Positions 3,685 through 62,300 of a stretch of 64,000 nt of DNA are shown piece by piece (the stretch's first letter is position 1; each line of letters opens with the position of its first letter). The notes beneath the pieces were generated by a model. That model was not told where the DNA came from, did not search any database, and worked only from the letters and a program-made list of their open reading frames with translations. The translations under genes were made by a program, and so were the position numbers. This DNA comes from Mytilus edulis (Eukaryota). The DNA is taken from positions 41,416,001 to 41,480,000 of the forward strand of contig NC_092347.1 in the NCBI RefSeq assembly GCF_963676685.1, written 5' to 3'.

Positions 3685-3845
3685 ATAAACTCATCATAGA
3701 TACCAGGATTAAAATTTTATCTTTGCGCCAGACGCGCGTTTCGTCTACAAAAGACTCATTAGTGATGCTTAAATCAAAATGGTAAAAAAAGGGCAAAATA
3801 ATTTGAAGCGCATTGAGGACCAAGTATTCCTAAAAGTTTTCTTAA
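3685..3845 (-). repeat. Degenerate retrozyme fragment (hammerhead core CUAAUGA)
   Basis: The reverse complement reads gcatca-ctaatga-gtcttttgtagac-gaaacgcgcgtc-tggcgc, homologous to the 355-bp unit. Confidence 0.8.
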
Positions 3846-15634: not shown

Positions 15635-15800
15635 ATTTTGTATTTGCGACAGGCGCGCGTTTCGTCTACACATGACTCAGCTGTGACGCTCGAATATTTT
15701 TTTTTAAAAGGCCAAGTAAAGTATGAAGTTGAAGAGCATTTAGGACCAAAAATTCTAAACGTTTTGACAAATACAGCTACGGAAAGGATTTTCCTTGGTC
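15635..15800 (-). repeat. Degenerate retrozyme fragment
   Basis: The reverse complement reads gagcgtca-cagctga-gtcatgtgtagac-gaaacgcgcgcc. Both the core and the cleavage triplet are mutated. Confidence 0.75.
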
Positions 15801-23232: not shown

Positions 23233-25089
23233 TTACATGTGCTAAAGTTTCAATTAAATGTTCATGATAATTAAAACAAATCGTGTTATGAAATTTGGAA
23301 AAAGAGGTTCATGATTGCTGCCGAAATAAAAGAATAGTGCATGTTGCTATAGTCTCCGCCCGGGGATATAGGTTCGACACAGGTTAAATTTTGCAATTTT
23401 TATTAATCGTTAATAGCTTTTAACGATTTATTTAAAAGAATGGGGGGGGGGGGGGGGATCTCATTACATGAACTTCGTCCAACTTTTGTAAAGACAAATT
23501 GGAGACACCAAGACACTTAATGTAAAATGCGAATTGAAATTTATGTTGCGGAAGTACTCCGAAATAAATCATTTAAAGTCGTCACTTCAGTAAGGTGCAA
23601 TCACCAATATTAAAAGACTTTATACCAGTTCACGGAATGTTTTACTTTGCGATTTGTCCTGCTATTCATGCTATAACTGTCGTGATGAAAGTTATTCCTA
23701 TACTAGCGAAGCCGGAACTTTTCGTCAATATTAACTTGTGCATGAAATGTAGGTAATTGAAAGACAAATCCCAAACAGCGACGAAAACCGTTTCATCGAA
23801 TAAATAAAAACCCCGGATTATATTAGCCGTTTTCGCGGACGATTCAGTAGTAGATTACTATATTTTAAAATGTATATCAGAAGTTAAACACTATAGATGA
23901 CTTGGGAAATATTTCACAAGCCAAGGTTCAAGTAATTGAAGGGTTGTATTTCAACAACTTATGTGCCAGGGAAAATACAATTCTATTCAAATTAAACCAA
24001 GGGTAAAAATGTTCGATTTACTTGCAGAGTGTCAGATATATTTGTATTGGGGTTGAATTAAGATATAGAAATTTTACAATGACAGATGATATGCACCTTG
24101 AAAGTTAAACATCCTATGATAAAAATTTTGTACATCTAATAATATTTTTTTTTTATGGAAAACCGTATACATGTACTTCCGTCCCATCCTTCCTTCATAC
24201 ATTACTTGCAACAGTACTGCATTTTTAGTTGAAATAACTTAAAGGGTAAACATTATTAAATCGATTTCCACAACTTGAGGTAATTTATGATAAAATGACA
24301 TCTCAAAACGAACAGAACCAGAATCAACCAACATATAAAAAAACGAATAAAACTTGCAAAAATTAATCGAAGTCAAAAACCCTCTTCGACGCCGCATTTA
24401 AAAGTGTAACGTCGTGTTTTAGGAACATCGTGCCAAACGTTTGAAAGTAGAAATAGAGCAATCAATACTTCAATTAACCCTTATTACAAGAAGGCATGTA
24501 GTTTGCGATTATTTAAAGGGAGGTGGAAAGCTTGGCTTGCCTTGGTAGGACTGAATGCCAGTCCTCATACAATTCCACATTTTATTCATACAACAAATAG
24601 AAGTTTATTTTGCCTTGAATGGCTTTACTGCCCTGTCACGTTTGGTAACACATTAGAATTTAAATTGGTATCTATAAAATATATAAGTTTCTCACAGAAG
24701 GTAACCAAAGAAGGTAACCAAAGATTTTTCGACGATGCAAATATTAAACTTTACAATATAAATAAATATCTTTAACCAATGAATTCAAATAGCAAAAGCT
24801 ACGCAATTAACAAATATATACTTATTAAGATTCATGTTAATTATTTAACAATAAAATACATTAAATATGAAATTTGGAGTTTTACCAAGGGAGCTAACAA
24901 TTAATTAATAACACTGTCTGCCACACAGCATTTCGGGGACTCTCCCTCTGGTATCTTTCGTTCCTCTTTTATAGCTGACTATGCGGGTTTTTTCTAATTA
25001 TTGGGAGCATTATGATGACCTATATTTATTAATTTCTGTGTCATTTAGTCTCTTGGCAATCATAATACATATTCTTTTATATATATAAA

Positions 25090-25282
25090 TTGTCGTTATT
25101 ACGACATAGCTATGTCGTTAAAATGACATAGTGATGTCGTTATTACGACATGTTATGTCGAAATTACGACATAGCGATGTCGTTATAACGACATGTTATG
25201 TCGTAATTACGACATCGCGATGTCGTAAAAACGACATGTTATGTCGAAATTACGACATGCTATGTCGTAATTACGACATAAT
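25090..25282. repeat. Self-complementary minisatellite (ATGTCG-N5-6-CGACAT units, ~20-22 bp)
   Basis: About 9 units here and about 4-5 in the left arm (20025-20130). Confidence 0.85.
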
Positions 25283-25333
25283 TTTTTTTTTGAATGGCCC
25301 TTATCGGCTTCCGTACATATCGGACTGTATTTA

Positions 25334-37849: not shown

Positions 37850-39688
37850 CCCTTACTGAAAAAATCAGCCTCCTGCAAACATTTGCTTCAAGTCTGCTGC
37901 GAACTTTCTGCAGACTTGCAGCGAACACAGAGTCCATGTTTGTGGCGTGTTTGCTGCAAATACGCTGCATGTCTGCTGCAAACAATTTACCATGCAAATG
38001 AGTGTTCGCTGCAGACCTGCTGCAAACATTAATATGCAAATGAGTGTTTGCTGCAGACCTGCTGCAAACATATTTTTACAAATCAATCTTTCTCCTGCGT
38101 GTTTGCTGCAGACCTGCTGCAAACATTTATATGCAAATGAGTGTTTGCCGCAGACCTGCTGCAAACATATTTATGCAAATTAATATTTCTCCTGAGTGTT
38201 CGCTGCAGACCTGCGGCAAACATTTTTATTCAAATCAATCTGTTATACAATTAACCAATGTCATGTTGTGTACACACCATTTTATCTATATTACACAGCA
38301 AATTCTAAAAAAAGTTGTTACATCCATTCATAAAATAATTCAATTACTTTATCATTTCAAAAACTATCATAGCATAAGTTTATACATGTTATACCTTTTA
38401 ACATGTTTGATAAGTTAAATTAATTCCAAGTACGTTTTCAAATGAATTACATGCATGAATCTAAATTAAAAAAGATTTATTTGAAAGGAGTAGGTCCAGT
38501 AAGACCCCTTTTTGGCCCCAAAATATAGCAGTTTTACAAAATTGTTAAAATGTAAACTTTTAGTTATTTATTGGACAGTAGAATGCTTTTGCTACATAAA
38601 TATGGCCAGTTTTTGACAATACAATTAATGCACATATATCGGGTACTAGCACCATTAAGTCATGCTATATTACTGAAAACTTCACTATTCTAGCATTTTA
38701 GTTAAATTTGATACGGTTTTCGTGTAAAACGGAAGTGGCCGCATTCGTGTTCATCCTTAATATTGAAATGTAAGTTGTATTTGATGATAATACATAACAT
38801 ATATAAAGTTTGAGGATGAACACGGATGCGGCCACTTTCATTTTTGACAAAAACCATCTGAAAAGTGACATTTTTCGGCATATTTGCTAGATTTTTCATA
38901 TTTGAGCTGGAATCGGATCGTTTTTAATGACTAAATCAGTTGAAATCTTTCACAAAAACGAATTGATTCAAATGAAATAGACACTTAAGTGTTTAATAAG
39001 TGGTCAAAATCTTTCGTCAGATGAACCTGGAATTTGAGGCCAGAATTGGTTCTTACCAGACCTACTCCTTTGATTTGCGCATGTATATATATACAGCTAG
39101 TTAAAATAAAATTCTCAAAAAATTCAACTGGGCTTACATATTTTGCATATGAGGGAGTACTGTATATTGCATGGTTACATATTTGAAATTGTATTTTTAA
39201 CCTTCATGCAGATATCTGTGGAGGGAATGAATATTTCATAAGTTTACATTCTACAATGAATTTGTACTTACAAATAATGTCTTTAAAAAACTAATCTGTT
39301 AATTGCCAAACTATAATGACTCCCTGAACACTAATATATATCATGACACAAACATCACCAACATTTTCAAATTTCAAATCTTTATCTTCCAGGAAGTTAC
39401 CAATAGGCATGCAAAGTCGTTTTATGTAGTTTCTTGCAATGCTCTTGCAAACATATAAAATTGTCAAAGATTCCTGCAATCTAGCTGCGAACATCCCTTA
39501 TATTCTTGTTTTTCCTGCAATCTTACTGCAAACATATTTGTTTCTGCAAACTTGTCGCAAGCTTGCAGCAAAAAGCTGCAATGTTTGCAGGAGGTTTGCA
39601 GCTAGCTGCAAACATTATTCAAATTAAGGGTTCCTGCAAGCTTTTTGTTTGCAGCAGACCTGCTGCAAACATTTCAGTTCTGTGTGGG
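37850..39688. mobile_element. CACTA/EnSpm-like non-autonomous element with subterminal GCAGACCTGCTGCAAACA repeats
   Basis: CCC...GGG ends with TT on both sides. Repeat-rich blocks at 37870-38225 and 39430-39675. Confidence 0.6.
38486..39069. mobile_element. Kolobok-like MITE nested in the previous element
   Basis: TIR AGGAGTAGGTCCAGTAAGA / TCTTACCAGACCTACTCCT, degenerate TTAA flanks, internal inverted repeat (38735-38765 / 38810-38838). Confidence 0.7.
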
Positions 39689-44300: not shown

Positions 44301-47300
44301 TAACATCATTTTTTTTTTTAATTTCCTACTCATTTTTTTAAATAGAATATTAAAATATGCATAACGTTGTAATGCAAGTTTTGTGCTTTAATTTTTTTTT
44401 TTCAATTCCAGAGCAAATTATAGCAGCACATGAAAAATTGAGGGAAGTTGAAGAAAAAACAAAGTCAAAAGAAAATGACTTTAAAACGTTTTCAGGTAAG
44501 ATAATATACCTGTAGTAACATCACTTGTGTTTTGCCAAAATAAAGTGATTACAAATTACAGATTTTTTATTTACTAAGCTATATATAAAAGTAGGGGTCA
44601 AAAAATTTTCTTTTTCACACATTGTTTTTCTAAGATTTAAACAATCTGTGCTATCACTTGTTATAAAAGTATTGTCAATGCAAGGTGGTTTTTTTTTTTT
44701 TGATTTAGAGGCACTTATTAAATAATTATATTCAAATACATAAAGAGAAACATTTACAAATGTACATGTAAAGGACATAATGTATGCCTTTTTTAAATTA
44801 ATCGATAAAATATCGGTCATATGACTGCTTATAAAAAGTAAAGAATGTCTTTAGAACTTTAGTATAAGAAATTGATCTACTTTGTCATTGTTTGAAAGTA
44901 TTAAAAGGAAATTACAACTGCTTTGTGATCTTTGTCTTTGTTTGAAGGGTATTTAATGGAACTATTCAATCGTCACAACTCGGCCGATTCCGTACCTCAT
45001 CTAACGAGACGGAAGCGGAGTCACCCGAGGATTGCCGATTGTGGAACTATTCTTATTCTGTATGCCTATTACACGACTTTTCTTACAAAATAAGATTGTC
45101 ATAACTTAAATATTTTTGACATGAATTCATTGGAAGTATATAATAACTTGTGTGTTGAAAAGATAATATGGTTGGTCTCAGTGTAACAAATAAGATACAT
45201 ACACATTGTTGCACTTTTTTGGACGGGTTATGCCAAATAAAAAAGTCGGCTTATGGTATGGTGATGTCAGGTGTCTGTTATTATGGAAAATTCATATTCT
45301 CGTTGAATAGTTCCAAATTTTGCAAACCAACCGTCATTTTTTTGTTTGTTCCATTATTTTTGGTTATTGCAAAAGAAGTTAAGCGTTAAATCTTTGTAAT
45401 TGAATTCATCTAATAATGAGCCAGTACAGAATAATTAATTTTACGATTAAGCACATGTTGTAAGCATATGTAAATATATGAGTTATCACCTAGTTCACAT
45501 GCAAAATTTCTCGTGTCAAACCCGTACCAAATATAATGATTTCTTAAAGTGTTTCCATATCATTTTGTGTTCGGGATGTTCGGTTTTGTTCCGTATATAT
45601 ATGAATATGAGCAATATATTTGTTTTTCGTTTTCCTCGTAATACCTAGTTTCATGTGGATTTTTTCACGTGTGCTTGTGTGAAATATTTGTACAGTCTCC
45701 CCTAAGATGTACGTTTGAAAATCTTATTCCATATTTTACAACATGTCTCTTATTTTTTTTCAGACAAATTAAAAACACAAGAGAGTTCACTGAAGTCCTG
45801 TAATGATCAATTGGCTAGTGCTAAAACAGAACTCAATCAAACCACTGAAAGACACAAACGAGTAGCAGATGAGCTTGGTAACTGACGAAATTATTTACAA
45901 ACCCAATGTATTAAATTTTAAGACATAAAAAAATATTGTTTATGATGTGTTGTCAACTTTTGGAGAAAAAAAGTCGTGTATCTCTTTTTCTCAATATGGC
46001 AGCGGTCCTGTTGAGTGTTTATTTTTCATTTAAACTGAGAGCAATGTGAATAATCAGTCGAACATATATAAATATCTAATATATAAATGTGAATACATTA
46101 TTTATGTAATTCCAAAATCTGAATGCAAAATATAATTTAGAAGAATGGTGTTTTTATATCAAAGTGTAGTCTTATTTGTTTGGATTTATTTTAGCACGAT
46201 TAGACGAAACCCATTCTCTCAACAGACATTTACAACAGATGCTGACCAAGGAGAACAAAACAAATGGCAAGTTTCTTTCACATTAGTATATGTTGTTTTT
46301 TGTTTTATTTTTTAACAAACTCCGAAACAATGGTAGCGTCGTCTTTGCTAAGTTACATTGAAAGTTTAACAAAGCAACGTCACCGCTGTTTTGGAGTTTG
46401 ATTTCCAAACTTAGAATCATTTGCCATTGCTTTCGAATTTTATTAATTGAATTTTGAGTCCTCAGTTCTCTTTAAATTCGTAATTTATTTAGCCTTTTTA
46501 AACTATTTTTTGTAGGCGTCACTAATGAGTATTTCGTAGATGAGACTAAAAGCGCGTTAAGTGTATAAAATTTTAAGCCTGATATGCATGATGAGCTTAT
46601 TGATAAGAGGCTAGAACGTGATAAAGACATAACACCTGAAAACATTTGTATTGATGTAATACATGTATTTGATCAGAAAGTTCGATTTAGTCTTTCAATA
46701 TGATAAGGATTTTAATTGTTTAATTTTATGCAGAAAGAAATGCTGAATGTTAATGTTATTCTGTAAGGGACTTACAGGTAACATCACTGGTTGCTTTTGA
46801 AAACAAAACTTTGAAATTCATACTAGGTTCATTATTATTTTTTTTGTAGAGAAAAAACAACTGGAATTAAACGCACAAAATGTAAAAATCACTTCACTAG
46901 ATGCAGATCGAAGGCAAAAAGAAGGTATTTCTAATGTAAACGGAATCTTCCGACTTTGACGAGAAGAATATTTAGGAGGGGGTAATATGATAAACGATTC
47001 AATGGAATAACAAAAGACATGTTCATGTCGAACCTAGAGATTTCACAAACCTGTTGCATATGATAATATAGTCTATTTATGTGTTTGCTTCAATGATTGA
47101 GGTCTGTGGGCCATACATTGACACCCCTTAATTGTAAATACTACCTTAAAGGTAACTATATAAGTTTTATTAAAAAACTGTCCTAGATAAGAAGGGATGA
47201 CAGCGTTCATAAAAGTGTTTTAACCAGTGCAACATTGATTATGGAATATCCGTTTAAAATTTTCCTTAGAGTTCATTATATTTGTGATTTTCTTTTATAC

Positions 47301-50300
47301 ATAAGGTCTAGATCTGGCATATCAGTAACTTCTAGTACTCCCTTGTTAATGTGTGTATCATTGTCATTTAGCTTAGTTTCTATTGTTACCTATTTTGAAA
47401 TCGAACTAGGACTTCTTTTAAATTGAGTTTTATTGTGCGTATTGCTGTGTACTTCTTTTAAATTGAGTTTTATTGTGCGTATTGCTGTGTACTTCTTTTA
47501 AATTGAGTTTTATTGTGAGTATTGCTGTGTGTTTCTTTATTCTACATTGGCTAGATGTACAAGGGGAGGGTTGAGATCTCTCAAAAAGTATTTAACCCCG
47601 CTGAATGTTTATGTCTATCCCAAGTCAGGGACCATTGTTAGTCGTGTATGTCGTTTTTTAAATTTAGTTCATTTATATACTTTGGAGTTTGGTATTACGT
47701 CCATGTTCAATGAACTAGTACACATTTTAATTTAGGGGCCATCTTAAGCCCACCTACGGATGCGGGAATTTCTCGCCATGTTGAAGACCCAGTGATGGCC
47801 TTGGACTGTTGTTTGTGCCATTCTCTATTTCTATTTTCAATTTTATGTCTCTCCCTCTCCTCGGAAATAATAACAAAAGTTGTCATAAGTTGTTGTCTGC
47901 CATACATGTTGTGGTCGGCAAAGGTTTATGCAGGCCATTGCCTTATTCCTTATTTCATTGTAACTTGATTTTTAGAACTTACTTTATGGCAAGGGTTTCA
48001 ACTAATGTAGGAGGCTGCTCATTAACCTTTATTTGTATACAATCCTGTTACTTTGTTTTGATGTTGTTTAAATGACAATCATACCACATCTGCCTATTCT
48101 TATATCGTAAAAATCATTGCATACTCGAGTTTCGTAGTAAAAAGTATAATTTGGTAGGTCATATAAGTGGTTGGGACATTAGGAGCATATTCGCCATCCC
48201 CTGTGAAACTGGTATTTCATAACTACCGACTTACCACGAAGAGTTGGACAATGCATTTGACTTAAAGGGTCGGTATCCCTCTTAGATCAGCTGTGAACCT
48301 TTATAGTTTTTTTTACCCAACCTTTTTATAATTAATTTTATTCTTTTTTCATCTACATTTATTGTAAATTTGTATTTATATATTAATGGTCATGAATGCT
48401 GTTTACTATTTTCTTTCCATTTTTTTTTATTTGTAGAAAAGATAAAACAACTGACAACAGAATTGCGTCAAGTTCGTGAAAGTCACGAACAATATAAGAG
48501 ACAAATAGAAACTGCATTAGGTAATTTTACTTTTAAGGCTCCTTGATGTATTCAAGCTGCATCTTACATAAATACATGTTTATGTTTTCTATAGAAATTT
48601 GGGTCAAGAAGAAAGTCGTTTTATTTTATTAAACTTCTTCGACTCTTGCTAAATTGAGTCTTTGTATTCCAATAATGTATTATCTGTGTAATCAGATATG
48701 ATGGTCTAAAATAGAATGTCTTGCCTTTTTTTTTTCTTTTTTTTTTTTTTTATTAAAAATCACTTTTTAGCGATACATATTTTTTGTCTAGAATCTACAG
48801 ACTATTTACTTGTCGTTTGAGCTGGAACTTTAAAATAATTTCAATTCATTCCAACAGAATTTGTTAAGCAAGGTATATATCAAAGCATGTCATTTGCAAA
48901 TAAGTCACTATTGTACAATACACTCTTAGAGTTGTGAAACTTAAAAAAAAAAGTATATAGAATAAACTGTCAACTGATTTTTATAAACTATTTTATATTA
49001 AGTACGATAAAGTGAGAGGATATTAAAATCGACTTAACAATAAAATATACATGCAACATACGTTACTAATTTACACAATGCGAGGGGGCAACTGCCTTAT
49101 GACTCCCACGACTATCCTCAATGCAAATCATTATTTATTTCAATGTTTTGTCTATAGGTAATCTACAAAGCAAGCTACAACTTCAAGAAAGAACTATCAA
49201 AATAAAGGAAGAGGATGCTAAATCTAAAAAAATGCACATTGATAAGTTACAAGAGAATAAACAGCAATTGGAAGGTAACCATTGAGAGAGAGAGTCACTC
49301 AGAGATTTTATAATGCTAGTCCATTGCTAAGATTACTATAAAGGAATAGATATCGCCGAACGTTTTGATGCGAATTTCCCCCCGTTTTTTATTAAAAACA
49401 AATATGTATTTCTTCCAACTAAATGTCCCAACCATTCAACCTTGATTCTAGTTATGAAAACGAAAGTTTATTATATTTTGTTTGATGTTATTTAAAATAT
49501 CTTCTTGTCAGAACTTTCAAGAATAAATACAGGATTGATTGAACTTCACTGTTACTTTTATGTTTTATTAATTTTTTTTAATTTCAAGTAATCCAAACCC
49601 ACACCTTAAAGTAGTTTTATCATCAATTGAAAAAATATAGTGCAAATAATTAAGGATATAACAAATGTATACTTAATGTTGTTGTCCTTTTCTTGAATAT
49701 TCGGAAAATTCCAGTACCCAATGGTACTAGTTAACGGTCAATACACTAGTATAAACAATACTTATCAAAACATTGTTGAAATTGTGTCCATAAGTCGTCG
49801 TCTGGATTATACTTAATATACTTTACGCTTCAACATATGTCTTATATTAATACAAAATAACCTGAAAAGGAAATGCAATAAAGTACAATTATTGTCTGGC
49901 GTATAAAATTATAATCCTGGTACTTTTGATAACTATTTACACAACTGGGTCGATGCCACTGCTGGTGGACGTTTCGTCCCCGAGGGTATCACCAGCCCAG
50001 TAGTCAGCACTTCGGTGTTGACATGAATATCAATTATATGGTCATTTTTATAAATTTTCTGTTTACAAAACCTTGAATTTTTCGAAAAACTAAGGATTTT
50101 CTTACCCCAGGAGTAGATTTCCTTAGCCGTATTTGGCACAACTTTTTGGAATTTTGGATCCTCAATGCTCTTCAACTTTGTATTGATTTGGCTTTTTAAC
50201 TATTTTGATCTGAGCGTCACTGATGAGTCTTATGTAGACGAAACGCGCGTCTGGCGTATAAAATTATAATCCTGGTACTTTTGATAACTATTTACACAAC

Positions 50301-53300
50301 TGGGTCGATGCCACTGCTGGTGGACGTTTCGTCCCCGAGGGTATCACCAGCCCAGTAGTCAGCACTTCGGTGTTGACATGAATATCAATTATATGGTCAT
50401 TTTTATAAATTTTCTGTTTACAAAACCTTGAATTTTTCGAAAAACTAAGGATTTTCTTACCCCAGGAGTAGATTTCCTTAGCCGTATTTGGCACAACTTT
50501 TTGGAATTTTGGATCCTCAATGCTCTTCAACTTTGTATTGATTTGGCTTTTTAACTATTTTGATCTGAGCGTCACTGATGAGTCTTATGTAGACGAAACG
50601 CGCGTCTGGCGTATAAAATTATAATCCTGGTACTTTTGATAACTATTTACACAACTGGGTCGATGCCACTGCTGGTGGACGTTTCGTCCCCGAGGGTATC
50701 ACCAGCCCAGTAGTCAGCACTTCGGTGTTGACATGAATATCAATTATATGGTCATTTTTATAAATTTTCTGTTTACAAAACCTTGAATTTTTCGAAAAAC
50801 TAAGGATTTTCTTACCCCAGGAGTAGATTTCCTTAGCCGTATTTGGCACAACTTTTTGGAATTTTGGATCCTCAATGCTCTTCAACTTTGTATTGATTTG
50901 GCTTTTTAACTATTTTGATCTGAGCGTCACTGATGAGTCTTATGTAGACGAAACGCGCGTCTGGCGTATAAAATTATAATCCTGGTACTTTTGATAACTA
51001 TTTACTCACTGATGTGCAGTTTCAATACGACAATAACCAATAAACATAATCGAGACAATATGAAAATAGTTAGTGTTGATTGATGAAAACATATAGAAAC
51101 ATATCACTTAGATCCCAAAAACTGGTACATGACGCTATAATCGATAAAGTTTACATAGGATTGCATTAACTATTTGAGATCGGTTGCTTGAAATTAAAAT
51201 ACACACATGACATACGTCTTGCAGTCTGGATAGCGGCCGAGAAAAGAATAGAAATTAAAAAAGAAAACTTTAATAACAAAAAAAAAGCTGGATTATAGGT
51301 ATAGTACAAAAGTTACAAAGGGTCAGGTATAATAGATCATTCATGAAAGCTGTTTATTTAGTTCTTTAACGTGTATATTGCATTCTGTACCATTTGTTTG
51401 AGATGTGTCTCGAGAAGGTATAACTAGTAGAGCTCAACATTCTGAACATTACTTTCTCTATTTGTAACGGTTTTCAAAATTATAGACAACACTTTACATT
51501 TTATTGTTTGCCATATCGTCATGGTTGGCAGACGGGGCTATCGGACACATTTTATAAACTAGATACCCCAATAATGACTGTGGCCAAGTTTGTTTGAATT
51601 TGGTTTAGTAGTTTCGGATGATACAATTTTTGTAAAAGTTAACGCACGACGACGACGACGACGACGACAGACGACGACGACGACGACAGACGACGGACGC
51701 CTATTGGTCAAGGTAACAGATGATGTAATGTTGAGCTCGACCAGTTGTCCATATACGTAAAAAAAAACTTTGACGACATTTTATGAGTTATAACTGGTAT
51801 ACCAGAATAGTATATTTCATATAAGTAAACAATTGTCATATTTTATTCTATAGGTCAAATAATACAGCTGAAAATGGATTTCAGGCAGAAGGAAATGGAA
51901 CTACAAAAAGAATCCTCAGAACATCAGCGTAAGTTTATTTAGACTTTATTAGTCTTATTTACTGTGCTTTTCCTGAAGGATTTAGCTTATCTCAATAGAA
52001 ATGGCTCAAAAAATAAAGTTTATCAAATTTCAGTTTGAATTCATCTCCCAGAAACTGTTCAACTGTTAAAATACGATAAAAACTTGCTTCAGTGACCTGT
52101 CGTTATAGTATGGAGTGAGTGCAGTGAAATAAAATGTATTAATAAGTATCTATATTCAGTTAGATTTTTATTCATGGAATTCAATTCAAAAACAGTATGA
52201 CATACTATAATATGATATCCTAAATAAATTTATAAATAATGAGTTAAAAAATTTGTGTTGGGTCAATATAATTTATAATGTATAGTTTTGTTTTGCAACA
52301 GCATGCTTTTCTTAAACTTTAAGAATAGTCAAATTATTCGTTTTATAGTTAGGAATAGGAGAGTTTCACCGAATTATATGGGTTTTTAGGTAGTATTACA
52401 TTCAATGTAAAAATTAACTGCTTTTTAAAAGCCTTTCGGCATTTCCTGTCATGAATCCTATTTTAAACTTTTTTTCCATTTAAGAATATCTAGTAAATCT
52501 ACTTTCATCGTCATTAGATTTTGTAATGGATATACTCTATATGTATGGGCATATCATGCGCTCTTGTCACTGCTTTCTTCTCTTTTTATTAGTATTAGTA
52601 TCATTATTTACAGTTAAAAAATCTTCGTATAACACTAGAACACACCGTGACTAAACTAGTACAAGTACTTTCTCCTTTTATTTTGGCTGGAATTTTAATT
52701 TATAGTCGTTTTTGTCATATGAAAAAATCATGCTGATTTTAATGTGCATATACATGTAATTGTGTCTGTTTTCAAAATCTCCAACTGTGAACTCGTCCCA
52801 GATCATGGCTTTCTTACTACAACCGGAAACTACATGTGACATATACTATAGGAATCGGTATCGGATTCGACCTGTTAATTATTGAAAAAAATTATTGTTT
52901 GAAAAATAAACAGATGCTCGTTTTTATAATGTCTCATTGCTTTATCTTAGATTTTTATCATTTGTTAAATAATTTCAGAAACACATTTACAGCTGGTACA
53001 ACGATTTGAAGAAGTGGTGCAGTTAACTTCACAATTAAAATCCAAAGAAAGTGAACTAGAAGTTTTACAAGGTACAAATATAGAAATGCAACCTACTGCA
53101 ATGTGTTGTATTACTGGGAGGATCCTATCACCAGTATTTTACTGGTTATTAGAAATACGACGGTTCAACAAGTAAAACAGGGACTAATAACCCATACGGG
53201 TATATAAATAAACTAATTATAATAGATACCGGAATTAAAATTTTATACGCGTTTTTGCTACAGAAGATTCACCAGTGACGCTCGAATCTGAGTTATACCT

Positions 53301-56300
53301 TGGTTTATGGTTAGTTTTGTGCTGTTCAATCTTTATTGTTACTGTGAGTTGTTTTGAAAGACTTTTTGTTTTGTATTTTCGATCTTTTTTGGTATTGCTG
53401 TTTCTATATCTTCAGCTTTTTGTTAATGACAATACAATTCCAAAGGAAACACATTATCACATCAAATATGTTTAACAGGAGAAGTACAAATCTTAAATAG
53501 ATTTGCATTTGAAAATTATGCTCGTGCTTCATTAAACCTCATCCCTTTTTGGACTTTATCTCGATGACTATTTTCGTAATTAGAAAACTTCAGTCTTATT
53601 AAATAAGAACAATTTGTCACAAATAAAACTAAAAATAAAGAAAAAATCATATAAACCTCTAACTCCTCATTATTATCATACTTAAAGTTGTTTGTCATCG
53701 ACTATGACCTGCAAAATGGTCATACAAAACTCGTCAAATTGGTCATTAGACCTGTTGAACGTTAGAGTTCAGTATGTCCATTTGCTAGGGCTGTTGTGAG
53801 CTATTCTGATGTATGTTTTATGTATGTATATCCCTTGTTTCATTTATCATACGAAATATCTACTGTAGGCGAGGTGGTAAAGGTTAATGTTAATGCAAGG
53901 GAACTTACCATACGATATCAAGAATTACCAGAGAAAGAAGCTCAGTTCAGAAAGATAGCGGAAAGTAGCAGTTATCTTCAAGGTATTTTTTTATTCTTTT
54001 ATCTAAAATGCAACATCATATTTATTAAACACAAATCGTTTAGGAATATTCTGTTTACGTTGTTCGTCAGGTTATTTTAAGTAGTGGAAAAACATAATTT
54101 AGCAATCTTTATTTAAGAATGACATTTTTAGAAGAACTAAAGTGGCGCTTTGTCAAACTCACCTTTATGACAAGTCTATTAGTGAATTCAAAATATTGGT
54201 GTTGTCGAAATAAAACATCAATAAAATGATAAAAAAGCGACAAAAAGAAATACATTGCAATATAATGTTGAAAGAGCTTTTTTTTTTTTTTTATCTTTAT
54301 GGGTTGGAACATTCACATTGCTAATTCCATTCTAAAATGAACATAACACAAGAATTGTAGGCATCCGAAGCGTTTATCTGTATTTATTTTGTTTAGATTG
54401 GTTTTGATTTCTGGACACCTTTTTGCATAAAAAAAAACGTCAATGTTTTCATCTCTTATTAGTTAAATATTATAAACACATTTCAAGACATTTATATTTC
54501 ATCTTAATTGAAGTATTTGTATAGCCTCAAACATCAGTTGATTTATAGGATTCAATGTGTTGTTTTAATATATATTTAAATAATACAGTCATTTCTTATA
54601 ACTTAATTCTTAGTTCCATTTTAAACCGGAGTAAATCATGAAAAAATGTTGATGACGTCACGGTCACAAGACACAATTATGTCTATGAGCTGATGAACAA
54701 AACGACGTCAGCCAATCAGAAGACGCTTTACATCCAAAATTAAGTTATTCTTTGACACTCGTAATAAACGTTGCTTAACAATGTTTTGCAGAAGAAAATG
54801 CTGAACTTCTGGAGCAAATAAAAGTAGCTAATCGTTTGCAGTCAGTAGTTACAAATCTCAGAGAACAAAACGAATCATATTTCAAGGATAAGGAATCATT
54901 CCGAGGTATATTATATTTATAATAATTATAAGGAAAAAAAACTAACAAAAATGTTTCTCCTTTGTTTGTCATTGATGGAAATTTGTTTGCTTCACCATTG
55001 TTGTTGGGTAAAACAAAACTCAATGCCACCTGATGATACAAAACATAGTATGTATATATTGATGAACAGAAACAGTTATAAAAAATATTTAAATCTGCAT
55101 TGTCGACTATCATAGGAACATATTTTGGATTATTGGGGAAGTCAAGAATATGAAAGTTGTTTTCAATTAGTTTGATGTGTGTGAGCTTTTCATTTTTTCC
55201 ATTTGTTAAGGTATTTTCCGTTTTGAATGTCCCTTATTTTTGTTATTCTACGTTAAACTTATATAAATATTATTCACAATATTAAGTATTTTTGCAGTTT
55301 TGAATTAAGTCCACGTAGGTTTGACAAAATTTTGAATATATATATTGATACTAATACATGAATATAGCGAACTGTGTTGAAAAACCTATTCTGTAAGACA
55401 TTGTACTTTCGACTTCGAAGGCCAAATACTTATCAATGCATTTTTTTTCCAATAGTTTAAAATCATCACTTTTCGCAGTGCAGTGGTGATCTGTTTTCAA
55501 CTTTATGCCAAAATAAGCTACTATACATTGCATTACAGACATTGGTTCATTTATATGTTTCTGAGTTTAGTGTGACGTCCATAATCGCTTAACTAGAACA
55601 ATTTTTTGTTGAAAGGCACACTGACGCCTGCCTACTTTTGCGGGATATTCTTGTTGTGTTGCAGACCCATTGGTGGCTTTTGGGATGTTTTCTGCTTTTT
55701 GGTCGGATTGTTGTCTCTTTAACACAGTCCCCGTTTCCATTCTCAATCTAATTATTATCTTGTTTCTCGTTTTGTTCATTATTTATCCACATTTTACAAA
55801 GTAAATGCTATTTTATCAAAAGTTGTGCATCATGAAAGGTAAGGTTAAACTTACTGCTGTGCTTGGTCTGCTGATGTCAGTGTTTTATATCCTCTGTAAC
55901 CTAAGTTGATAGCCATTGTAGAAGATCCTTGAAATTTGAATCGAGTTATCCTAAATTTAAAGGTCATGAGAAGTGTTTCAGTTTCGATCCAGCTAAATGT
56001 ATGACAAATTAATAAATGTTATCATAATTATAAATTGTTGTCAAACTGCTGATGTTTCAGAAAGAAATAAAGTTATGGAGGAAAAATACAGAGAAATATT
56101 ACAACAGTATGGTCAACAAATGGAAGAATCTCAAACTTTTATGGGACAAAAAGCCAGTTTAAAAACACAACTTAAACAGAAGAGTGGTAAATAAATATTT
56201 GCTATAATTTGTATAAGTCCTGTCATGTAATGTTGTCATTTTAGTGTTATATTTATTATTGCCATACAAGCGGGAGGTTTGGCAATTTAGTATCGAATAA

Positions 56301-59300
56301 AATTGGTAATCATTGTATGTAGTTATGTTTCCTTTAATATTAAAGCTTAAATTACTGTACGTATGTACATAAAAACTCGTAAAAATTTGCTCGATTGTAA
56401 TTTAATTAGTCTTTGATGAGTTTGAGCATAAATTGAGTCGATGCCACTACTGGTTGACGTTTCGTTACCAAAAGTTGACAAGCCAAAAAAATCAGCACTT
56501 TTGTGCTTACATGAAATACCACTGATATCAGAGTATGTTCATTTTCTGTGACTTTAATATTTATGAAATGATGAAGTATGTAAAACTCTAAGATATATTT
56601 ACCCGAAGGTAAAGATTGCATCAGCTGTATTTTGGCACAACTTGTTGGTGATTACTACTTAGTTACTTCGTAATAATTGAATTAATTTTGCAACGAATGA
56701 GTTGTCTGGCGTAACATATAAAAGCCTGGTATTTCGTTACATCCTTACATGTATAACTGGCAGTCGATCTGGAACTACCGAAAGGCTTATTACGTTGCTA
56801 ATTTAAGAAGAATAACTTAAAACTTAAAGTCCTTAAAGACGTGTTAAATCCAAAAATTGTCATCTATAATATCTAGTGAAGAAAAACATTATTGTTTAAA
56901 CATGTTAAAGTAAGTTTCAACTTGTACAGATTTATTAACTTTTACTCTGTCACTCAGTGATATTTCATGTTAACACACACTTAATGATCATTGGGCTGTT
57001 GGTATAACGAAGAAATTGAGAATAGGAAAATGCATCGATCGATCGTTCGTACAGTACAGTTATTTAAAATGATTGACTTAGTCGTTTACAATTATTTATC
57101 AGGTGTGTCTATTTGAATACCCCTTGTCTATTGTAGATGAAGTAAACGCTTTGAACAACAAACTTAAAGAATTTTTTGGTAAGTACATTTACCGACACTG
57201 GCTGATGGTTTTATTGTTTATTATTCATTTGTTTCTTTTTAAGATTCATATAGACAAAAATGTGTCGTAGACAGTTCAGTATACATTCCGTGCAAACTAC
57301 GATCCCGGGTTTTTTTATGCATTTTTTGTTTCTGTTCAGGACTTTTTAATGACAGTTAGTGTTTTAAATAAATTTCTATTTGTACGGAGCACCAATGTTG
57401 GCGCCACTAGCGACACAAAACGGCTTACTTTTCCGTAGAAAGATTTGTATAGCTCAATCTTACAGAGTAGATAAGATAAGGAGAATTACAGGATTTATCA
57501 AAACTATTTTACCAGAAACACACCAACGCCCGACTCCTCTGGTAAAACCAAGACGAACAAACTAAGATCAATAACAACGAGCAATATATGATATAATTAG
57601 CCTCACTTGATCATTCAAGATGTCAACTATGAACTGCTGTCAAGAGCGAGGTTTAGCTAGCTATATAACTAGCATTAACTCACCATTTTCTTCGGAAAAT
57701 GCCTGTTCCAAGTCAGGAATATACTGTTTGTTTTTGCTTGTTCCGTATGTTGATAGCGTTTGATTTTGTCAATTTGAGGACTTCCCCTTTTTTGTATTTG
57801 CCTTTGGAGCTCGATATTTGTGTCGTATTTGTGATATAGTCACGGAATGTTTACTCTTAAATGTTTTATGAACTAAACTATTTAAGATTTCTGTTGATTT
57901 ATTTAATAGGGAAAGTGCAATCTCTGGAAACAGCTTTAGTAGAGTCTCATAGGGAATTATGGGAAGCAAGAGCTCATGTTAGTCCACAAACAGGTAGGCT
58001 TGCAATATTTTTATATATGGAAATATAATTTCTAATTATTTAAAATCATAGTCAAATCGACATTTTAAGTCTGTTGTCTGAATGAGTTTTATCAGTTATC
58101 TTTCGTTACCATAACGATATGTCATATGATTCATTAACGAAAGAGTATATTTATAGTTTTGATCGTTTTACAAAGTGTCAGCTGAGACTTATAACAGAGA
58201 CTTAGCTGATAGGTTTTTAAAAAAACAAAATCGACTAACGAAAGTATCATTCCACTTTTGATATGTTTGCTACTCTCGTTTTTATACGCCCGTCAAAATT
58301 TTGACGAGACGTATTATGGTATACAAATGTCCGGTGTCCGTCCGTCCGTCCGTCCGTCTGTCTGTCCGGCGTGAACATTTCGCACCGTAACTTGAGAATG
58401 ACTTATCTAAATTTCATGAAACTTAATATAGTTGTTCTTTATAATGGTCAAATGATCTGTATACTTTTTGGTGAAAATAAGATTTAAACTTTTTGAGTTA
58501 CGGCACTTTGTAACTAAAACAGGGGTGTGTTTTTTTTCACATGTTGCACCGTATCTCAAAAACGATTCTTGATTATTGCTTAAAACTTTACACACTTCTT
58601 AGTTATATTAATCTTAATATCTGTATACTTTTTGGTGATGATTCAAAATTTCATTTTTGAGTTATTGAGTATTTTGTAAAAAAGGGGGAGGGTTTTTTAC
58701 ATGTCGCGCCGTATCTCAAAAACGATTTATGACTATGGCTTAAAACTGTACACACTTCTTTGTTATATTAATCTAAAGATCTGTATACTTTTTGGTGATG
58801 ATTCAAAATTTCATTTTTGAGTTATTGAGTATTTTGTAAAAAAGGGGGAGGGGGTTTTTAAATGTCGTGCCGCATCTCAAAAACGATTTATGATTATTGC
58901 TTAAAACTTTACACACTTCTTTTTTATATTAATCTAAAGATCTGTATACTTTTTGGTGATGACTCAAAATTTCATTTTTGAGTTCTTGAGTATTTTGTAA
59001 AAAAGGGGAGGGTTTTTTTTACATGTTGCGCCGTATCTCAAAAACAATTTATGATTATTGCTTGAAACTGTACACACTTCTTTGTTATATTAATCTAAAG
59101 ATCTGTATACTTTTTGGTTTGATTCAAAATTTTATTTTAGTGATATTTGTAAAAAAAAAAAAAACAGGGTGGGGGGGGGGGGGGGGTTTCACATGTCCCG
59201 CCGTGTCTCAAAAGCAATAAATGGTAATTTCTTAAAACTTTCTCAGAAACTATTTATGATTATTGCATAAAACGTCCACACAAGACGTCGGGCGTATCAT

Positions 59301-62300
59301 GCGCTCATGGCGCAGCTGTTTATTGACTTTCGTAGTGCCATTAAAATGTCGCCCACCAACCCGTACTTTTTTCAAAAACTAGGACACGGCCCTATCATTT
59401 TTATATACTGTCAATTCATTAGTTTTTAAAACAAATGCTAATTATTAAACAAAGGAGCGAACATACTTAAGCACATATAATAAAGTTCCTTGTAGAGTAC
59501 TTAACAGGTACTGAATGAATTACCTTGTGACAATTATGGCAGATACGTATTTAAAAAAGGGCCATGTTAGAAATATTTTTACCGGTATTAAAATGTAATT
59601 CAAGTGCTTTTCAATCAATTAATTTGATCTTGACCCTGTACTTAAAATAGATCTAAAATTGAATAGAAGTAAAGAGAATAATCTTTTTAGGTCTTCATGT
59701 CTTTGAAAAGCAAAAATTGTGAATAACTAGTTAAACCGTTTATGCATTTATTATATTTGTAATTTGAATAATGTCTTATTTTTTTTCCACAATATTTGCA
59801 CAACACAATATTTGTACTTGTGGCAAATGAAAATAACGAAAAGAACCACAAATACTAAAATAAATGACTATCTTGCAGACATGTAAAGGAAAGTATGTCC
59901 TTTTTTAAGGATGACGTTATACATCTGCTTTACATTGCAACGACCAAAGTACGACCCCTCAAAATTGTATCATCTAAAATGGTGTGTATAAAATGTTTAA
60001 GATTCCTTAAACGTTGACACTCTATAACCATTATTATGTGTTCATGCTACAAGATCTCTTGTGAAATCTTAAATATCACCCTGCCATATTTTGCGTTTGC
60101 CTGTCCCAAGTCACAAGCCTATTATTCAGTGGTTGTTGTTTGCTGCTGTATTACATATATCTTTTTCATTGATTTGTTTGTACACATTGGGAAACATACC
60201 AAATCTTCTTTATTATATGTAAGTACCAGACGGATATTCAGAGTATAGTGTGATGCAAACATTGCATGTATTTATAACGATCTATTTGAAAGTTTGTGTT
60301 AAGATTTGAAATTTCAAATATTTTAGGCCTGAATCCTGAAGTAAGTGATCGAAATGAAGATCGTTTGTGCTAATACTAATACCGTTATTATAATATTAAC
60401 GTTTTATTATTTTCATATATACATTTTTCATCTTTAGAAATGGACAGAAAATTACTATTTGTATTATATATGAATAAGCACCAACTGCATTTGAAGTTTG
60501 GGGATATTTTCATTTCATTAAATATGATTGTTTTATATATAGTACTCAACAAGCTCAACACACTTTACATACATGTATAACATAGATATTTTTTTTAGTT
60601 TTACAAAAATATGTTTTACATTCAACAAAGCTATGTTTTATATTTAACAAAACTATATTTTACATTACAGTAACCGACAACTTTGGTATCTTTGGAAATT
60701 CGAACGCAAATTTATACAATAGAATAATACCACAAAATGATTCAGGTAGAGTTATAATAAGATGTATTATAAACTATGACGAAATGAGTTCTCTGATTAA
60801 TGTTTTACTGAGGAGTCATTTTTCAAAATGTCTTTAAATTTTATTATTTACTTATATTCCTTATAGTTGTAACATCATTAGTCTTCAACATCATGGTATT
60901 GCAATTATTAGCATATTGATATATTTGGGAATACCCATAAAACTTTAGGAATTTTATTTATCATCATATATATATATAATTAAAAGGGATCTGGTTTCAA
61001 CATAAAATTACATAAACAATTTGTGAAACAAATTTATAGTTACTGGTCATATCTATTACAATGTACTATATTCACATTTACTTATTGATTGGTTGATTTT
61101 TAACGCCACTGTAAGCACTTGACTATAATCTTGACTTTCAGTTTTAATTGATGGGGAACGCCTGTGAGAACCATCGACCTTCGACAATCTTAGAAATAAC
61201 AACGAGCAGCCATCAAATTAACTTTTTTGTAAAGACAAAAGAAAACATATTTTTAGAAGAAATCGATTGGAAACAATAGTACTAGTAGTTGGAAAAAGAT
61301 AATTTAAAATTTTCTAAACTATGAATTACAGATTTTGAAACTTTATATCTTACCATAAACTTGAGAGAGTGTGTCAGTGGACGATTTATAAACAGTTTAG
61401 CAATAGTCAGTAGCATAATTTTGATAGTCATGCTAATGTATAATATAAAATAATAATATCTTTCTGCACCAATTATAAGATAGAAATTTTTGTTGTTCTT
61501 ATTTATAGGATATGTAGAGAATTCCCCTAGTCATTCCCGATCAATGGAAGGAAAAAGGAACAATAATGGTAGGTATGAGTTTTCAAACTTTCTAAAGTAT
61601 TAAACTGGAAAACAAAATCGAATTACATATTGTAATGTTTTTCTAGAAAAATGTGATAATTGTGATAGTTTCCTGAACTAAACATTAAGAAACACCTTCA
61701 CAAGAGAAATACACTGTCATAAAAGTTTAAATTTATTTAGAAGTAGGTATTTTTTTATTATCTCTATATTCAATGCGGTTCTTTTCATAAAACGAATTAC
61801 GACAGAAACCGATCGTAACTTTTACTGATAAATAACTTGCGTGTAATTTTGTCTGAAAAATTTTGCTTGAAATGAGTCGTATTCAATGCTAGTGAAAACA
61901 ATCAAAATATCGTTCACTTCGAAAGGATGTATATAAAAAAAAATGTCTTCATTGAATGTCAAGCTTAAAGATACCCTTAATTCAGAAAGATCTTCAAAAA
62001 ACAACCTCAAGGGAAAATTAATAAAGAGTTATTTTCATGTACGTACACGTACTGAGTCGTTGGCACTGCTGGTGTACTGTATTTTCCGAGAATATCACCT
62101 GTTCAATAATCATAGCTTCTGCACTTGTATGTTTTATAGCAGCTATAGTTCTACAATTCTTTGTTGAGAAATATCTTTTTTTTTCCAAAAGAGACGTTTA
62201 CCTTACTTACATTATGTTTGTTCGTATTTATACCCCTGACTTTCAAATTTAGGTATGGGTGATCCTGATGAATCAAAATCCCCCAAAAATGCACTTTTTA

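What the first reader, a model, noticed from the sequence alone, without database searches (positions are those of the whole stretch)
49894..51005. Intact hammerhead-ribozyme tandem array (retrozyme) in sense orientation inside an intron
Seen: three apparently identical 355-bp units, each with a complete type I hammerhead (stem I GCGUCA/UGGCGU, CUGAUGA, stem II GUCU-UAUGU-AGAC, GAAA, GUC cleavage triplet), on the same strand as the host gene in intron 8 (49275-51853). Known: tandem type I hammerhead repeats (non-LTR retrozymes; newt satellite 2, schistosome Sm-alpha, also reported in Mytilus) self-cleave into monomers that circularise. Inference: host transcription would cut the pre-mRNA at 50251, 50606 and 50961 and release two exact 355-nt monomers (50252-50606, 50607-50961). 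That would make the intron a circRNA source and force splicing to compete with, or bridge, the cuts.
Basis: partly seen in the sequence, partly recalled or inferred. Interest (0 to 1): 0.9.

Follow-up and report, generated by a model that had tools for sequence, protein, structure and literature searches.

The report
Known mussel retrozyme array in intron
This is a very young, intact three-unit copy of the hammerhead-ribozyme "retrozyme" repeat already described and tested in Mytilus mussels; it is one of tens of thousands of copies in this genome and happens to lie, in sense, in an intron of a coiled-coil protein gene, so it is real but ordinary.

Summary
Window 49894-51005 is a 355-bp tandem repeat of 3.1 copies at 100% identity. 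It carries three complete type I hammerheads, each scoring 33.0 bits against Rfam RF00163. That is 1 bit under the gathering score, which is why the default scan missed them. The cuts are predicted after 50251, 50606 and 50961.

The array lies in sense in coding intron 8 (49275-51853) of a real 16-exon plus-strand gene. This gene is the orthologue of a 494-aa Mytilus trossulus coiled-coil protein.

The element is not new. It is the non-LTR retrozyme of Mytilus (Cervera & de la Peña 2020). Their cloned Mg353 hammerhead differs from this one by a single loop-2 base. It self-cleaved in vitro at about 0.1 per minute, and the family's circular RNAs were shown by northern blot.

This genome holds about 37,000 copies of the same hammerhead core. 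Older fragments of the family lie in other introns of the same gene. The scan itself has 187 hammerhead/retrozyme notes on other DNA of this genome.

Published work with slow intronic hammerheads suggests splicing would largely survive.

Side result: family copies share a fixed 3' end 40-44 nt past the cut and have variable 5' truncation.

The parts
49158..49274 (+). Coding exon 8 of the host gene (117 nt, phase-1 borders)
   Evidence: tblastn of P0002 residues 190-231 maps to 49151-49276 at 88% identity. The AG acceptor at 49156-49157 and the GT donor at 49275-49276 were read.
49275..51853 (+). Intron 8 of the host gene (2,579 nt, GT..AG). 1,112 nt of it is the retrozyme array.
   Evidence: P0002 residue 231 is shared by the matches that end at 49276 and start at 51853. 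Splice sites were read.
49894..49896 (+). GTC, the last three bases of a hammerhead, at the 5' edge of the array. It is the truncated remnant of an upstream unit.
   Evidence: TRF starts the array at 49894. Sequence read. The junction is printed.
49897..50251 (+). Unit 1 (355 bp). It has no complete ribozyme upstream, so its RNA would stay attached to the 5' part of the intron.
   Evidence: blastn 100% identity, unit positions 1-355
50252..50606 (+). Unit 2 (355 bp). Predicted excisable monomer.
   Evidence: blastn 100% identity; flanked by hammerheads 1 and 2
50607..50961 (+). Unit 3 (355 bp). Predicted excisable monomer.
   Evidence: blastn 100% identity; flanked by hammerheads 2 and 3
50962..51005 (+). 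44-nt tail, equal to the first 44 nt of a unit. This is the family's usual 3' terminus (..GATAACTATTTAC).
   Evidence: All 18 arrays end at unit position 40-49. In one search, 24 of 40 further copies end 40-43 nt after the cut.
50214..50257 (+). Hammerhead 1 (type I). Predicted cut after C50251.
   Evidence: RF00163, 33.0 bits, model 1-45
50569..50612 (+). Hammerhead 2 (type I). Predicted cut after C50606.
   Evidence: RF00163, 33.0 bits
50924..50967 (+). Hammerhead 3 (type I). Predicted cut after C50961.
   Evidence: RF00163, 33.0 bits
50299..50377 (+). GC-rich structured block of the unit (unit positions 48-126; shown for unit 2). It is the second widely conserved module of the family, just 3' of the family's insertion terminus.
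   Evidence: It is the only region that stays paired in the centroid fold. A 32-mer from it has 17,293 genome matches, against 3,446 for a mid-unit 32-mer. There are a few compensatory changes, but the covariation term is weak at -0.27.
51854..51928 (+). Coding exon 9 of the host gene (75 nt)
   Evidence: tblastn of P0002 residues 231-255 maps to 51853-51927. The gtaagt donor at 51929 was read.

Best explanation
The array is a recent insertion of the Mytilus non-LTR retrozyme. This is a non-coding, AT-rich 355-bp unit whose conserved parts are a type I hammerhead ribozyme and a GC-rich structured block. It was probably copied into the genome by a borrowed reverse transcriptase, most likely from a Penelope-like element. 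Synthesis appears to start at a fixed internal point 40-44 nt past the cut site and to run more than three times across the unit junction of a circular or multimeric RNA template. It stopped 3 nt short of a fourth junction. The copy landed in sense in intron 8 of a coiled-coil protein gene. Whenever that gene is transcribed, the pre-mRNA carries three hammerheads. They are expected to cut after 50251, 50606 and 50961, either singly or, helped by the palindromic helix III, as double hammerheads between neighbouring units. [quoted passage not shown] The published near-identical ribozyme is slow (about 0.1 per minute), so splicing of exons 8 and 9 most likely goes on largely undisturbed. The copy would then be a tolerated passenger that adds a little to the cell's large pool of retrozyme circles. 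Shown here: the anatomy, the ribozyme motif, the family membership, the copy number, the gene, the strand and the intron. Inferred: transcription through the array, cleavage and circularisation from this locus, the reverse-transcription route, and the mild effect on the host gene.
For: Array and ribozymes.

Family: PMC7229834 reports about 5,000 type I hammerheads in 350-390-bp repeats of M. galloprovincialis, in vitro self-cleavage at about 0.1 per minute, and abundant circular RNAs on northern blots. Its cloned repeat Mg353 has the same hammerhead except for one loop-2 base (read by eye).

Copy number in this genome: 37,276 hammerhead cores, reversed control 0; at least 1,369 candidate units on all large contigs.

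Retrozyme traits: unit GC 38.6%, longest ATG-ORF 34 aa in a trimer, no tRNA.

Youth: 0 differences among the three units, whereas other arrays show 0-18 (one outlier 56) per unit pair. The nearest other copies found differ at 4 or more of 355 positions.

Retrotransposition anatomy: a fixed 3' end at unit position 40-44 and scattered 5' ends in 18 arrays and 40 further copies. This fits the 5' truncation, partial tandems and 30-40-bp tail described for Penelope-like elements (PMC8557442) and the circle-templated model of PMC7229834.

Host gene: P0002 is XP_063432033 of M. trossulus. It maps collinearly in 16 exons on the + strand, with residue 231 bridging 49276 and 51853.

Double hammerhead: cofolding two 44-mers gives -29.5 kcal/mol against 2 x -9.2, with ACGCGCGU pairing in trans.

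Splicing tolerance: slow intronic hammerheads leave splicing intact. Older family fragments lie in three other introns of the same gene, two in sense and one antisense.
Against: Transcription of the gene in this animal, read-through of the array and cleavage are therefore unverified.

The hammerhead scores 1 bit below Rfam's gathering score.

In isolation the catalytic fold of one hammerhead (-5.7 kcal/mol) is less stable than an alternative fold (-9.2). The unit as a whole folds no better than shuffled sequence, z = -0.88. Misfolding within the pre-mRNA could therefore limit cleavage.

No target-site duplication is visible at this insertion, and no empty allele was found in the assembly. Insertion by reverse transcription is inferred from family anatomy, not shown for this copy.

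Identical units could also arise by unequal crossing-over after insertion.
Confidence: 0.8

Rival explanations
1. Silent passenger. The array is a genuine retrozyme copy, but in the host pre-mRNA it is effectively never cut. Splicing and lariat turnover are faster than a 0.1-per-minute ribozyme, or the hammerheads misfold in the intron context. The cell's retrozyme circles would then come from other, separately transcribed arrays, and this locus contributes nothing.
For: The published ribozyme is slow. The single-hammerhead fold is less stable than an alternative fold (-5.7 against -9.2 kcal/mol). PMC7229834 notes that in some mussel circles the predicted fold blocks the hammerhead. Only 1.6 kb separates the first cut site from the 3' splice site.
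Against: Three tandem hammerheads with a palindromic helix III favour the double-hammerhead form (-29.5 kcal/mol). An excised intron or lariat would still carry the ribozymes and have time to cut. No promoter of its own has been described for these elements in the papers read here.
Confidence: 0.3
2. Host-gene regulator. The sense array lowers or tunes the output of the coiled-coil gene by cutting its pre-mRNA before exon 9 is joined, as proposed for the intronic CPEB3 ribozyme. It might be kept, or be polymorphic, for that reason.
For: Sense orientation and intact ribozymes. There is a precedent for an intronic ribozyme competing with splicing (PMC10919898, abstract).
Against: Zero divergence means there has been no time for selection to be seen. 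With about 37,000 copies, sense intronic landings are expected by chance. Other sense fragments in the same gene have simply decayed. Slow hammerheads did not reduce splicing in the published tests.
Confidence: 0.07
3. Local satellite growth. A single inserted unit was amplified to three by unequal crossing-over or replication slippage. On this reading the tandem form says nothing about the RNA template.
For: The units are identical, which any recent duplication would give.
Against: Arrays all over the genome share the same layout of truncated 5' unit, whole units and a 40-44-nt tail. This is what one round of multi-unit reverse transcription gives. It is not what random unequal exchange would preserve.
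Confidence: 0.08

Closest known systems
Non-LTR retrozymes of Mytilus galloprovincialis (Cervera & de la Peña 2020, PMC7229834)
   Same: A type I hammerhead with the same sequence apart from one loop-2 base. A unit of about 355 bp in tandem, low GC, no ORF. The same GC-rich block after the cut site. Dispersed high copy number.
   Different: None in kind. This copy belongs to a subfamily whose first ~45 nt after the cut and whose apical hairpin differ from the cloned Mg353. The count in this chromosome-level assembly is about 37,000 cores, against 2,880 + 1,681 motifs in the 2016 draft.
Newt satellite 2 and Schistosoma Sm-alpha hammerhead repeats
   Same: [quoted passage not shown]
   Different: Unrelated unit sequences. 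According to PMC7229834, amphibian ribozymes need the dimeric form, whereas invertebrate ones also cut as monomers.
Penelope-like elements (PLEs) with hammerheads in their pseudo-LTRs
   Same: 5' truncation, partial tandems and a short tail at one end, few or variable target duplications, and type I hammerheads (PMC8557442).
   Different: PLEs encode a reverse transcriptase (with or without a GIY-YIG endonuclease). This unit encodes nothing. Their hammerheads are minimal variants lacking helix III.
Conserved intronic ribozymes of amniotes (HH9/HH10 hammerheads, CPEB3 HDV-like ribozyme)
   Same: A self-cleaving RNA in sense in an intron of a protein-coding gene, so that cleavage and splicing can compete.
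   Different: Those are single, anciently conserved motifs. This is a zero-divergence tandem copy of an active mobile element, with no sign of conservation at the locus.
Plant LTR retrozymes
   Same: Non-autonomous retroelements whose RNA is cut by hammerheads and circularised.
   Different: They have type III hammerheads inside LTRs, a PBS and PPT, 4-bp TSDs, about 700 bp, and higher GC.

Membership tests
Hammerhead ribozyme, type I (Rfam RF00163) | Conserved core CUGAUGA ... GAAA ... H17 cleavage triplet, in the right order and spacing | tested here: met
   CUGAUGA, GAAA and GUC are all present. Full-length alignment to model positions 1-45.
Hammerhead ribozyme, type I (Rfam RF00163) | Helix I open, helices II and III closed by loops | tested here: met
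   Helix I GCGUCA/UGGCGU is formed by the two ends. Helix II is GUCU/AGAC with loop UAUGU. Helix III is AC/GU with loop GCGC.
Hammerhead ribozyme, type I (Rfam RF00163) | Score at or above the curated gathering threshold (34 bits) | tested here: not met
   33.0 bits, 1 bit short. E is 5.5e-6 and 2.4e-4 over the window. The shortfall comes from non-consensus helix I bases, not from the core.
Hammerhead ribozyme, type I (Rfam RF00163) | Self-cleavage at the predicted site | not testable with these tools
   Published for the Mg353 clone, which differs by one loop-2 base (kobs about 0.1 per minute).
Metazoan non-LTR retrozyme | Short tandem units (about 170-400 bp), each with a type I hammerhead | tested here: met
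   355 bp x 3.1 copies, with three hammerheads
Metazoan non-LTR retrozyme | Low GC (<45-50%), no LTR/PBS/PPT, no coding capacity | tested here: met
   GC 38.6%. Longest ATG-ORF in a trimer is 34 aa. No tRNA-like part. The flanks are unique intron sequence without terminal repeats.
Metazoan non-LTR retrozyme | Dispersed, multi-copy, with signs of retrotransposition | tested here: met
   37,276 cores genome-wide. Fixed 3' end and variable 5' truncation. TSDs are rare: 3 of 46 copies, and none at this copy.
Metazoan non-LTR retrozyme | Sequence kinship with the described Mytilus element | tested here: met
   Compared by eye with the Mg353 text. The hammerhead differs by one base and the same CTGGGTCGATGCCACTGCTGGTGGA block is present.
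Metazoan non-LTR retrozyme | Expressed as linear and circular monomer RNA | not testable with these tools
Shown for the family by northern blot and RT-PCR in PMC7229834.

The most novel reading that the evidence does not exclude
Sense intronic retrozyme arrays such as this one may be a main way the family gets transcribed, since no promoter of its own has been described for it in the papers read here. Host pre-mRNAs would then be the precursors of the abundant mussel retrozyme circles. Young, probably presence/absence-polymorphic arrays like this one would measurably change the output of their host genes through co-transcriptional cutting. A companion point from the family anatomy: the fixed DNA 3' end 40-44 nt past the cut, next to the conserved GC-rich block, would mark the internal priming site of reverse transcription on a circular template. 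That would be genomic evidence for the circle-templated model.
Probability: 0.2. Interest if true: 0.55.

Novelty: already known. Interest (0 to 1): 0.2.

Why it matters
As a discovery it matters little. Hammerhead retrozymes of Mytilus, their self-cleavage and their circular RNAs were published in 2020. This genome holds tens of thousands of copies, so a sense copy in an intron is expected.

It is useful as a clean natural test case. The array has zero divergence, intact ribozymes, a well-defined intron, unique flanks and a few private variants. RNA from this locus could therefore be told apart from the family background. Alleles with and without it, if they exist, would give a direct in vivo measure of what three tandem slow hammerheads do to splicing.

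The family-wide anatomy seen on the way bears on how these elements are copied, which is still a model rather than a demonstrated mechanism. That anatomy is a fixed 3' end, 5' truncation, rare TSDs and about seven times more copies than reported.

Tried and rejected
1. Default Rfam gathering scan of the window gave no hit. The hammerheads score 33.0 against 34 bits and appear only with the E-value threshold.

4. Empty allele or haplotig in the same assembly: both flanks are single copy, apart from an unrelated dispersed repeat at 51427-51505.

5. Identical sibling or source copy: the three other loci that share the rare mid-unit variant are 96.6-98.6% identical over their well-preserved units, not 100%.

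6. Target-site duplication at this insertion: none. The longest flank match is 5 nt, no better than the shuffled-pair control.

7. tRNA-like head or Pol III origin: ARAGORN finds nothing, and the unit has several T4-5 runs.

8. A second, antisense hammerhead in the unit (another first-stage note, 49958-50004): there is no minus-strand hammerhead match at E<=10 or E<=1. Read by eye, the reverse strand lacks the CUGAUGA core.

9. Rod-like, highly paired monomer: not supported for this unit. Linear fold z = -0.88. The circular fold is 61% paired with z = -0.95 against mononucleotide shuffles.

10. Covariation in the GC-rich block: only weak (covariation term -0.27), because the sampled copies are too similar.

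11. Pfam on the host protein: nothing above threshold. Its database name (streptococcal M-like protein PAM) is an artefact of coiled-coil composition.

12. Steps left out: a joined, spliced model of the host protein was not built or searched. Only one exon was searched by reference, and the related protein was mapped back exon by exon.


Full report
**What is there**

The sequence at 49894-51005 is a perfect tandem repeat. Tandem Repeats Finder reports period 355, 3.1 copies, 100% matches and no indels. blastn of one unit against the window gives three full units at 49897-50251, 50252-50606 and 50607-50961. These are followed by a partial unit ending at 51005 (the blastn match itself runs on to 51008) and preceded by three bases, GTC, of an upstream unit.

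Each unit ends in a complete type I hammerhead. Read directly, the motif is as follows:
- GCGUCA, the 5' strand of helix I.
- CUGAUGA.
- Helix II, GUCU/AGAC with loop UAUGU.
- GAAA.
- A short helix III, AC/GU around GCGC.
- GUC.
- UGGCGU, the 3' strand of helix I.

Rfam's Hammerhead_1 model (RF00163) aligns over its whole length at 50214-50257, 50569-50612 and 50924-50967 on the + strand. Each match scores 33.0 bits. That is one bit below the curated gathering score of 34, so the default scan found nothing and only the E-value scan did. E is 5.5e-6 on 1.5 kb and 2.4e-4 on the whole window. The predicted cuts fall after C50251, C50606 and C50961.

**Host gene and strand**

I searched one candidate exon by reference (window 56063-56185) against the protein representatives. 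It found a 494-aa protein, P0002, at 98% identity over the exon. The cluster look-up names it XP_063432033 of Mytilus trossulus. It carries an automatic and misleading name, [quoted passage not shown]. Pfam finds no domain in it. It is a coiled-coil protein.

Mapped back by tblastn, P0002 covers 16 collinear exons on the + strand from 41334 to 61570. Identity is about 85% overall. Residues 190-231 map to 49151-49276 and residues 231-255 to 51853-51927. With the splice sites read, coding intron 8 is 49275-51853 (GT..AG, phase 1). The array lies inside it in sense.

**Which organism**

The genome is most likely a Mytilus mussel other than the M. trossulus reference animal. Three things point this way: the best protein match, the 1.37-Gb size of the genome, and large contigs numbered up to C14. 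That Mytilus has 14 chromosome pairs is my own knowledge.

**What it is**

The element is the non-LTR retrozyme of mussels. Cervera & de la Peña (2020, PMC7229834) reported the following for M. galloprovincialis:
- About 5,000 type I hammerheads within repeats of 350-390 bp.
- Co-transcriptional self-cleavage of a cloned repeat at about 0.1 per minute.
- Abundant circular RNAs on northern blots of gonad, mantle, gill and hepatopancreas.

Their supplement prints the cloned construct Mg353. Read by eye, its hammerhead differs from the one here by a single base in loop 2 (UUUUG against UUAUG). The block CTGGGTCGATGCCACTGCTGGTGGA and the block CCGAGGGTATCACCAGCCCAGTAGTCAGC also recur.

The other defining traits hold as well:
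- Unit GC is 38.6%, and the longest ATG-ORF in a trimer is 34 aa.
- There is no tRNA-like part.
- There are no terminal repeats.

Copy number in this genome is very high:
- The 355-bp unit has at least 1,369 candidate copies on all large contigs.
- The 32-nt hammerhead core occurs 37,276 times at up to 3 mismatches, against 0 for the reversed control.
- That is roughly one hammerhead per 37 kb, and about seven times the number counted in the 2016 draft genome.

The window itself holds older, decayed fragments of the family:
- At 2830-2951, 3693-3838 and 15654-15785 on the minus strand. One of these carries a degraded hammerhead, 22.3 bits at 3725-3768.
- Inside other introns of the same host gene at 46449-46546 (+), 53211-53283 (-) and 56431-56648 (+).

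The scan's own index holds 187 hammerhead/retrozyme notes on other DNA of this genome. Two of them are first-stage notes of sense intronic copies in other genes. A sense copy in an intron is therefore an expected event, not a special one.

**Age**

- The three units show no difference from one another.
- In ten other arrays the pairwise differences range from 0 to 18 per unit, with one outlier of 56.
- The closest other copies found differ at four or more of 355 positions.
- The three loci that share this array's rare mid-unit variant are 96.6-98.6% identical over their well-preserved units.
- The flanks are single copy in the assembly, so no empty allele was available.

The copy is young, but I could not date it.

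**How the family is copied (a side result)**

- In 18 arrays chosen only as the best matches to the unit, every array ends at unit position 40-49, most at ..GATAACTATT(TAC). The 5' ends are scattered over the unit.
- In 40 further hammerhead loci taken from contig 1, the element ends 40-43 nt after the cut in 24 cases and 35-49 nt after it in 33.
- In those same loci the length upstream of the cut ranges from 35 to over 400 nt.
- Flank duplications are rare. Only 3 of 46 elements have a flank match of 8 nt or more, one of them 20 nt. The array studied here has none.

A fixed 3' end with 5' truncation is the signature of target-primed reverse transcription. The end lies 40-44 nt beyond the ribozyme cut, so the template must have spanned the cut site. 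The template was therefore a circle or an uncleaved multimer, or synthesis started internally and then jumped between monomers.

This fits two published accounts. One is the model in which a primed circular RNA yields tandem cDNA (PMC7229834, discussion). The other is the anatomy described for Penelope-like elements: 5' truncation, partial tandems, a 30-40-bp tail, and TSDs often not discernible (PMC8557442).

In the present array the 5' end lies 3 nt upstream of a cut site, not at it. Three of the 18 arrays end within 8 nt upstream of a cut, which is suggestive but rests on a small sample.

**Conserved modules**

Genome counts of four 32-mers from the unit, each at up to 3 mismatches:

| Segment of the unit | Genome matches |
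|---|---|
| Hammerhead core | 37,276 |
| Positions 10-41 | 23,443 |
| Positions 84-115 | 17,293 |
| Positions ~206-237 | 3,446 |

5' truncation inflates the counts of the segments near the 3' end. However, positions 84-115 lie further from that end than positions 206-237 and are still five times as frequent. So the GC-rich block (positions 48-126) is a second conserved module, and the middle of the unit is the variable part.

The block is the only region that stays paired in the centroid fold. An alignment of 35 copies shows a few compensatory changes, for example in the apical hairpin of the Mg353-like subfamily. The covariation term is weak at -0.27, so its structure is only suggested.

The unit as a whole does not fold better than shuffled sequence:
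- Linear fold: z = -0.88.
- Circular fold: 61% paired, z = -0.95 against mononucleotide shuffles.

**How the ribozymes would work here**

- Helix III is weak. The stretch ACGCGCGU is a perfect palindrome.
- One 44-nt hammerhead in its catalytic fold has -5.7 kcal/mol. An alternative fold has -9.2.
- Two hammerheads cofold into the classic double hammerhead, with an 8-bp helix III in trans, at -29.5 kcal/mol.

Tandem copies should therefore help cleavage, although the published single-hammerhead construct also cut.

If the host gene is transcribed, the expected products are these:
- The 5' part of the intron still joined to unit 1.
- Two 355-nt monomers with 5'-OH and cyclic-phosphate ends, which are substrates for a tRNA-type ligase according to PMC7229834.
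- The 3' part of the intron, beginning at 50962.

**Effect on the host gene**

Published experiments found that a slow hammerhead placed in an intron left splicing efficiency unchanged, whereas a fast ribozyme abolished splicing. These are Dye et al. 2006 and work from the Bentley laboratory, as summarised in PMC2995048. With a rate near 0.1 per minute and 1.6 kb between the first cut site and the 3' splice site, I expect little effect on the host mRNA. This step is inference.

**What could not be done**

- As a result I have no evidence on expression of the gene or the array, on cleavage ends, on circles from this locus, on insertion polymorphism, or on the orthologous intron in other species.

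**Verdict**

The thing itself is an ordinary, very young copy of an already characterised mobile element in the genus where it was characterised. I class it as already known and score interest at 0.2. Its main use is as a clean natural construct for testing intronic ribozyme cleavage against splicing in vivo.

Noticed in passing
L001-L030 and L038-L077 (own genome); window 50962-51005: Copies of this retrozyme family share a fixed 3' terminus 40-44 nt past the ribozyme cut (..GATAACTATT[TAC]) and have 5' ends scattered over the unit. Many are short solo copies of 35-200 nt plus the tail. This points to target-primed reverse transcription that starts at an internal site of a template spanning the cut, either a circle or a multimer.
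   Followed up: yes
own genome G000: The hammerhead core of this family occurs 37,276 times at up to 3 mismatches (reversed control 0). That is about seven times the 2,880 + 1,681 motifs counted in the 2016 M. galloprovincialis draft. Part of the excess over other unit segments is due to 5' truncation.
   Followed up: partly
window 50299-50377 (unit positions 48-126), and the same block in L042, L056, L046: A GC-rich structured block just 3' of the family's insertion terminus is the second conserved module of the unit. It is also present in the published Mg353 clone. The apical hairpin shows compensatory changes in the Mg353-like subfamily, but overall covariation is weak. It may be the 58-nt motif of another first-stage note (s1-836129) and could be a recognition element for the reverse transcriptase.
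   Followed up: partly
window 50243-50250 and equivalents (ACGCGCGT): Helix III plus its loop is a perfect 8-nt palindrome. Two hammerheads cofold into a double hammerhead at -29.5 kcal/mol, against 2 x -9.2 for separate folds. Neighbouring units may therefore cut cooperatively.
   Followed up: partly
window 46449-46546 (+), 53211-53283 (-), 56431-56648 (+), 62051-62112 (+); also 2830-2951, 3693-3838, 15654-15785 (-): Older, 69-86% identical fragments of the same retrozyme family. Three of them lie in other introns of the same host gene, in both orientations. One upstream fragment keeps a degraded hammerhead (3725-3768, 22.3 bits).
   Followed up: partly
window 49958-50004, minus strand: Another first-stage note proposes an antisense hammerhead-like motif here. 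Rfam finds no minus-strand hammerhead at E<=10, and the reverse strand lacks a CUGAUGA core. The stretch is simply part of the GC-rich hairpin block.
   Followed up: partly
window 51427-51505 and 51646-51695: The same intron also holds a piece of an unrelated dispersed repeat (72 candidate copies in the genome, 74-93% identical) and an (ACG)n microsatellite of 16 units.
   Followed up: no
L061 (G000:C1:7035791-7036722): One solo retrozyme copy is flanked by a direct duplication of 20 nt or more (TTTGCCAAGGATAACAAAAA). It is the clearest target-site duplication among the 46 elements examined. Most have none.
   Followed up: partly
window 25087-25285, 38710-38862, 20025-20128: Long AT-rich hairpins or palindromes that hit several plant microRNA precursor models on both strands, far below their gathering scores. 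They are probably inverted-repeat transposon remnants, not microRNA genes.
   Followed up: no
window 41334-61570 (+): The host gene is a 16-exon coiled-coil protein gene whose sampled introns are phase 1 and whose exons are multiples of 3 (117, 75 and 126 nt). Its RefSeq orthologue carries a misleading automatic name (streptococcal M-like protein PAM).
   Followed up: partly
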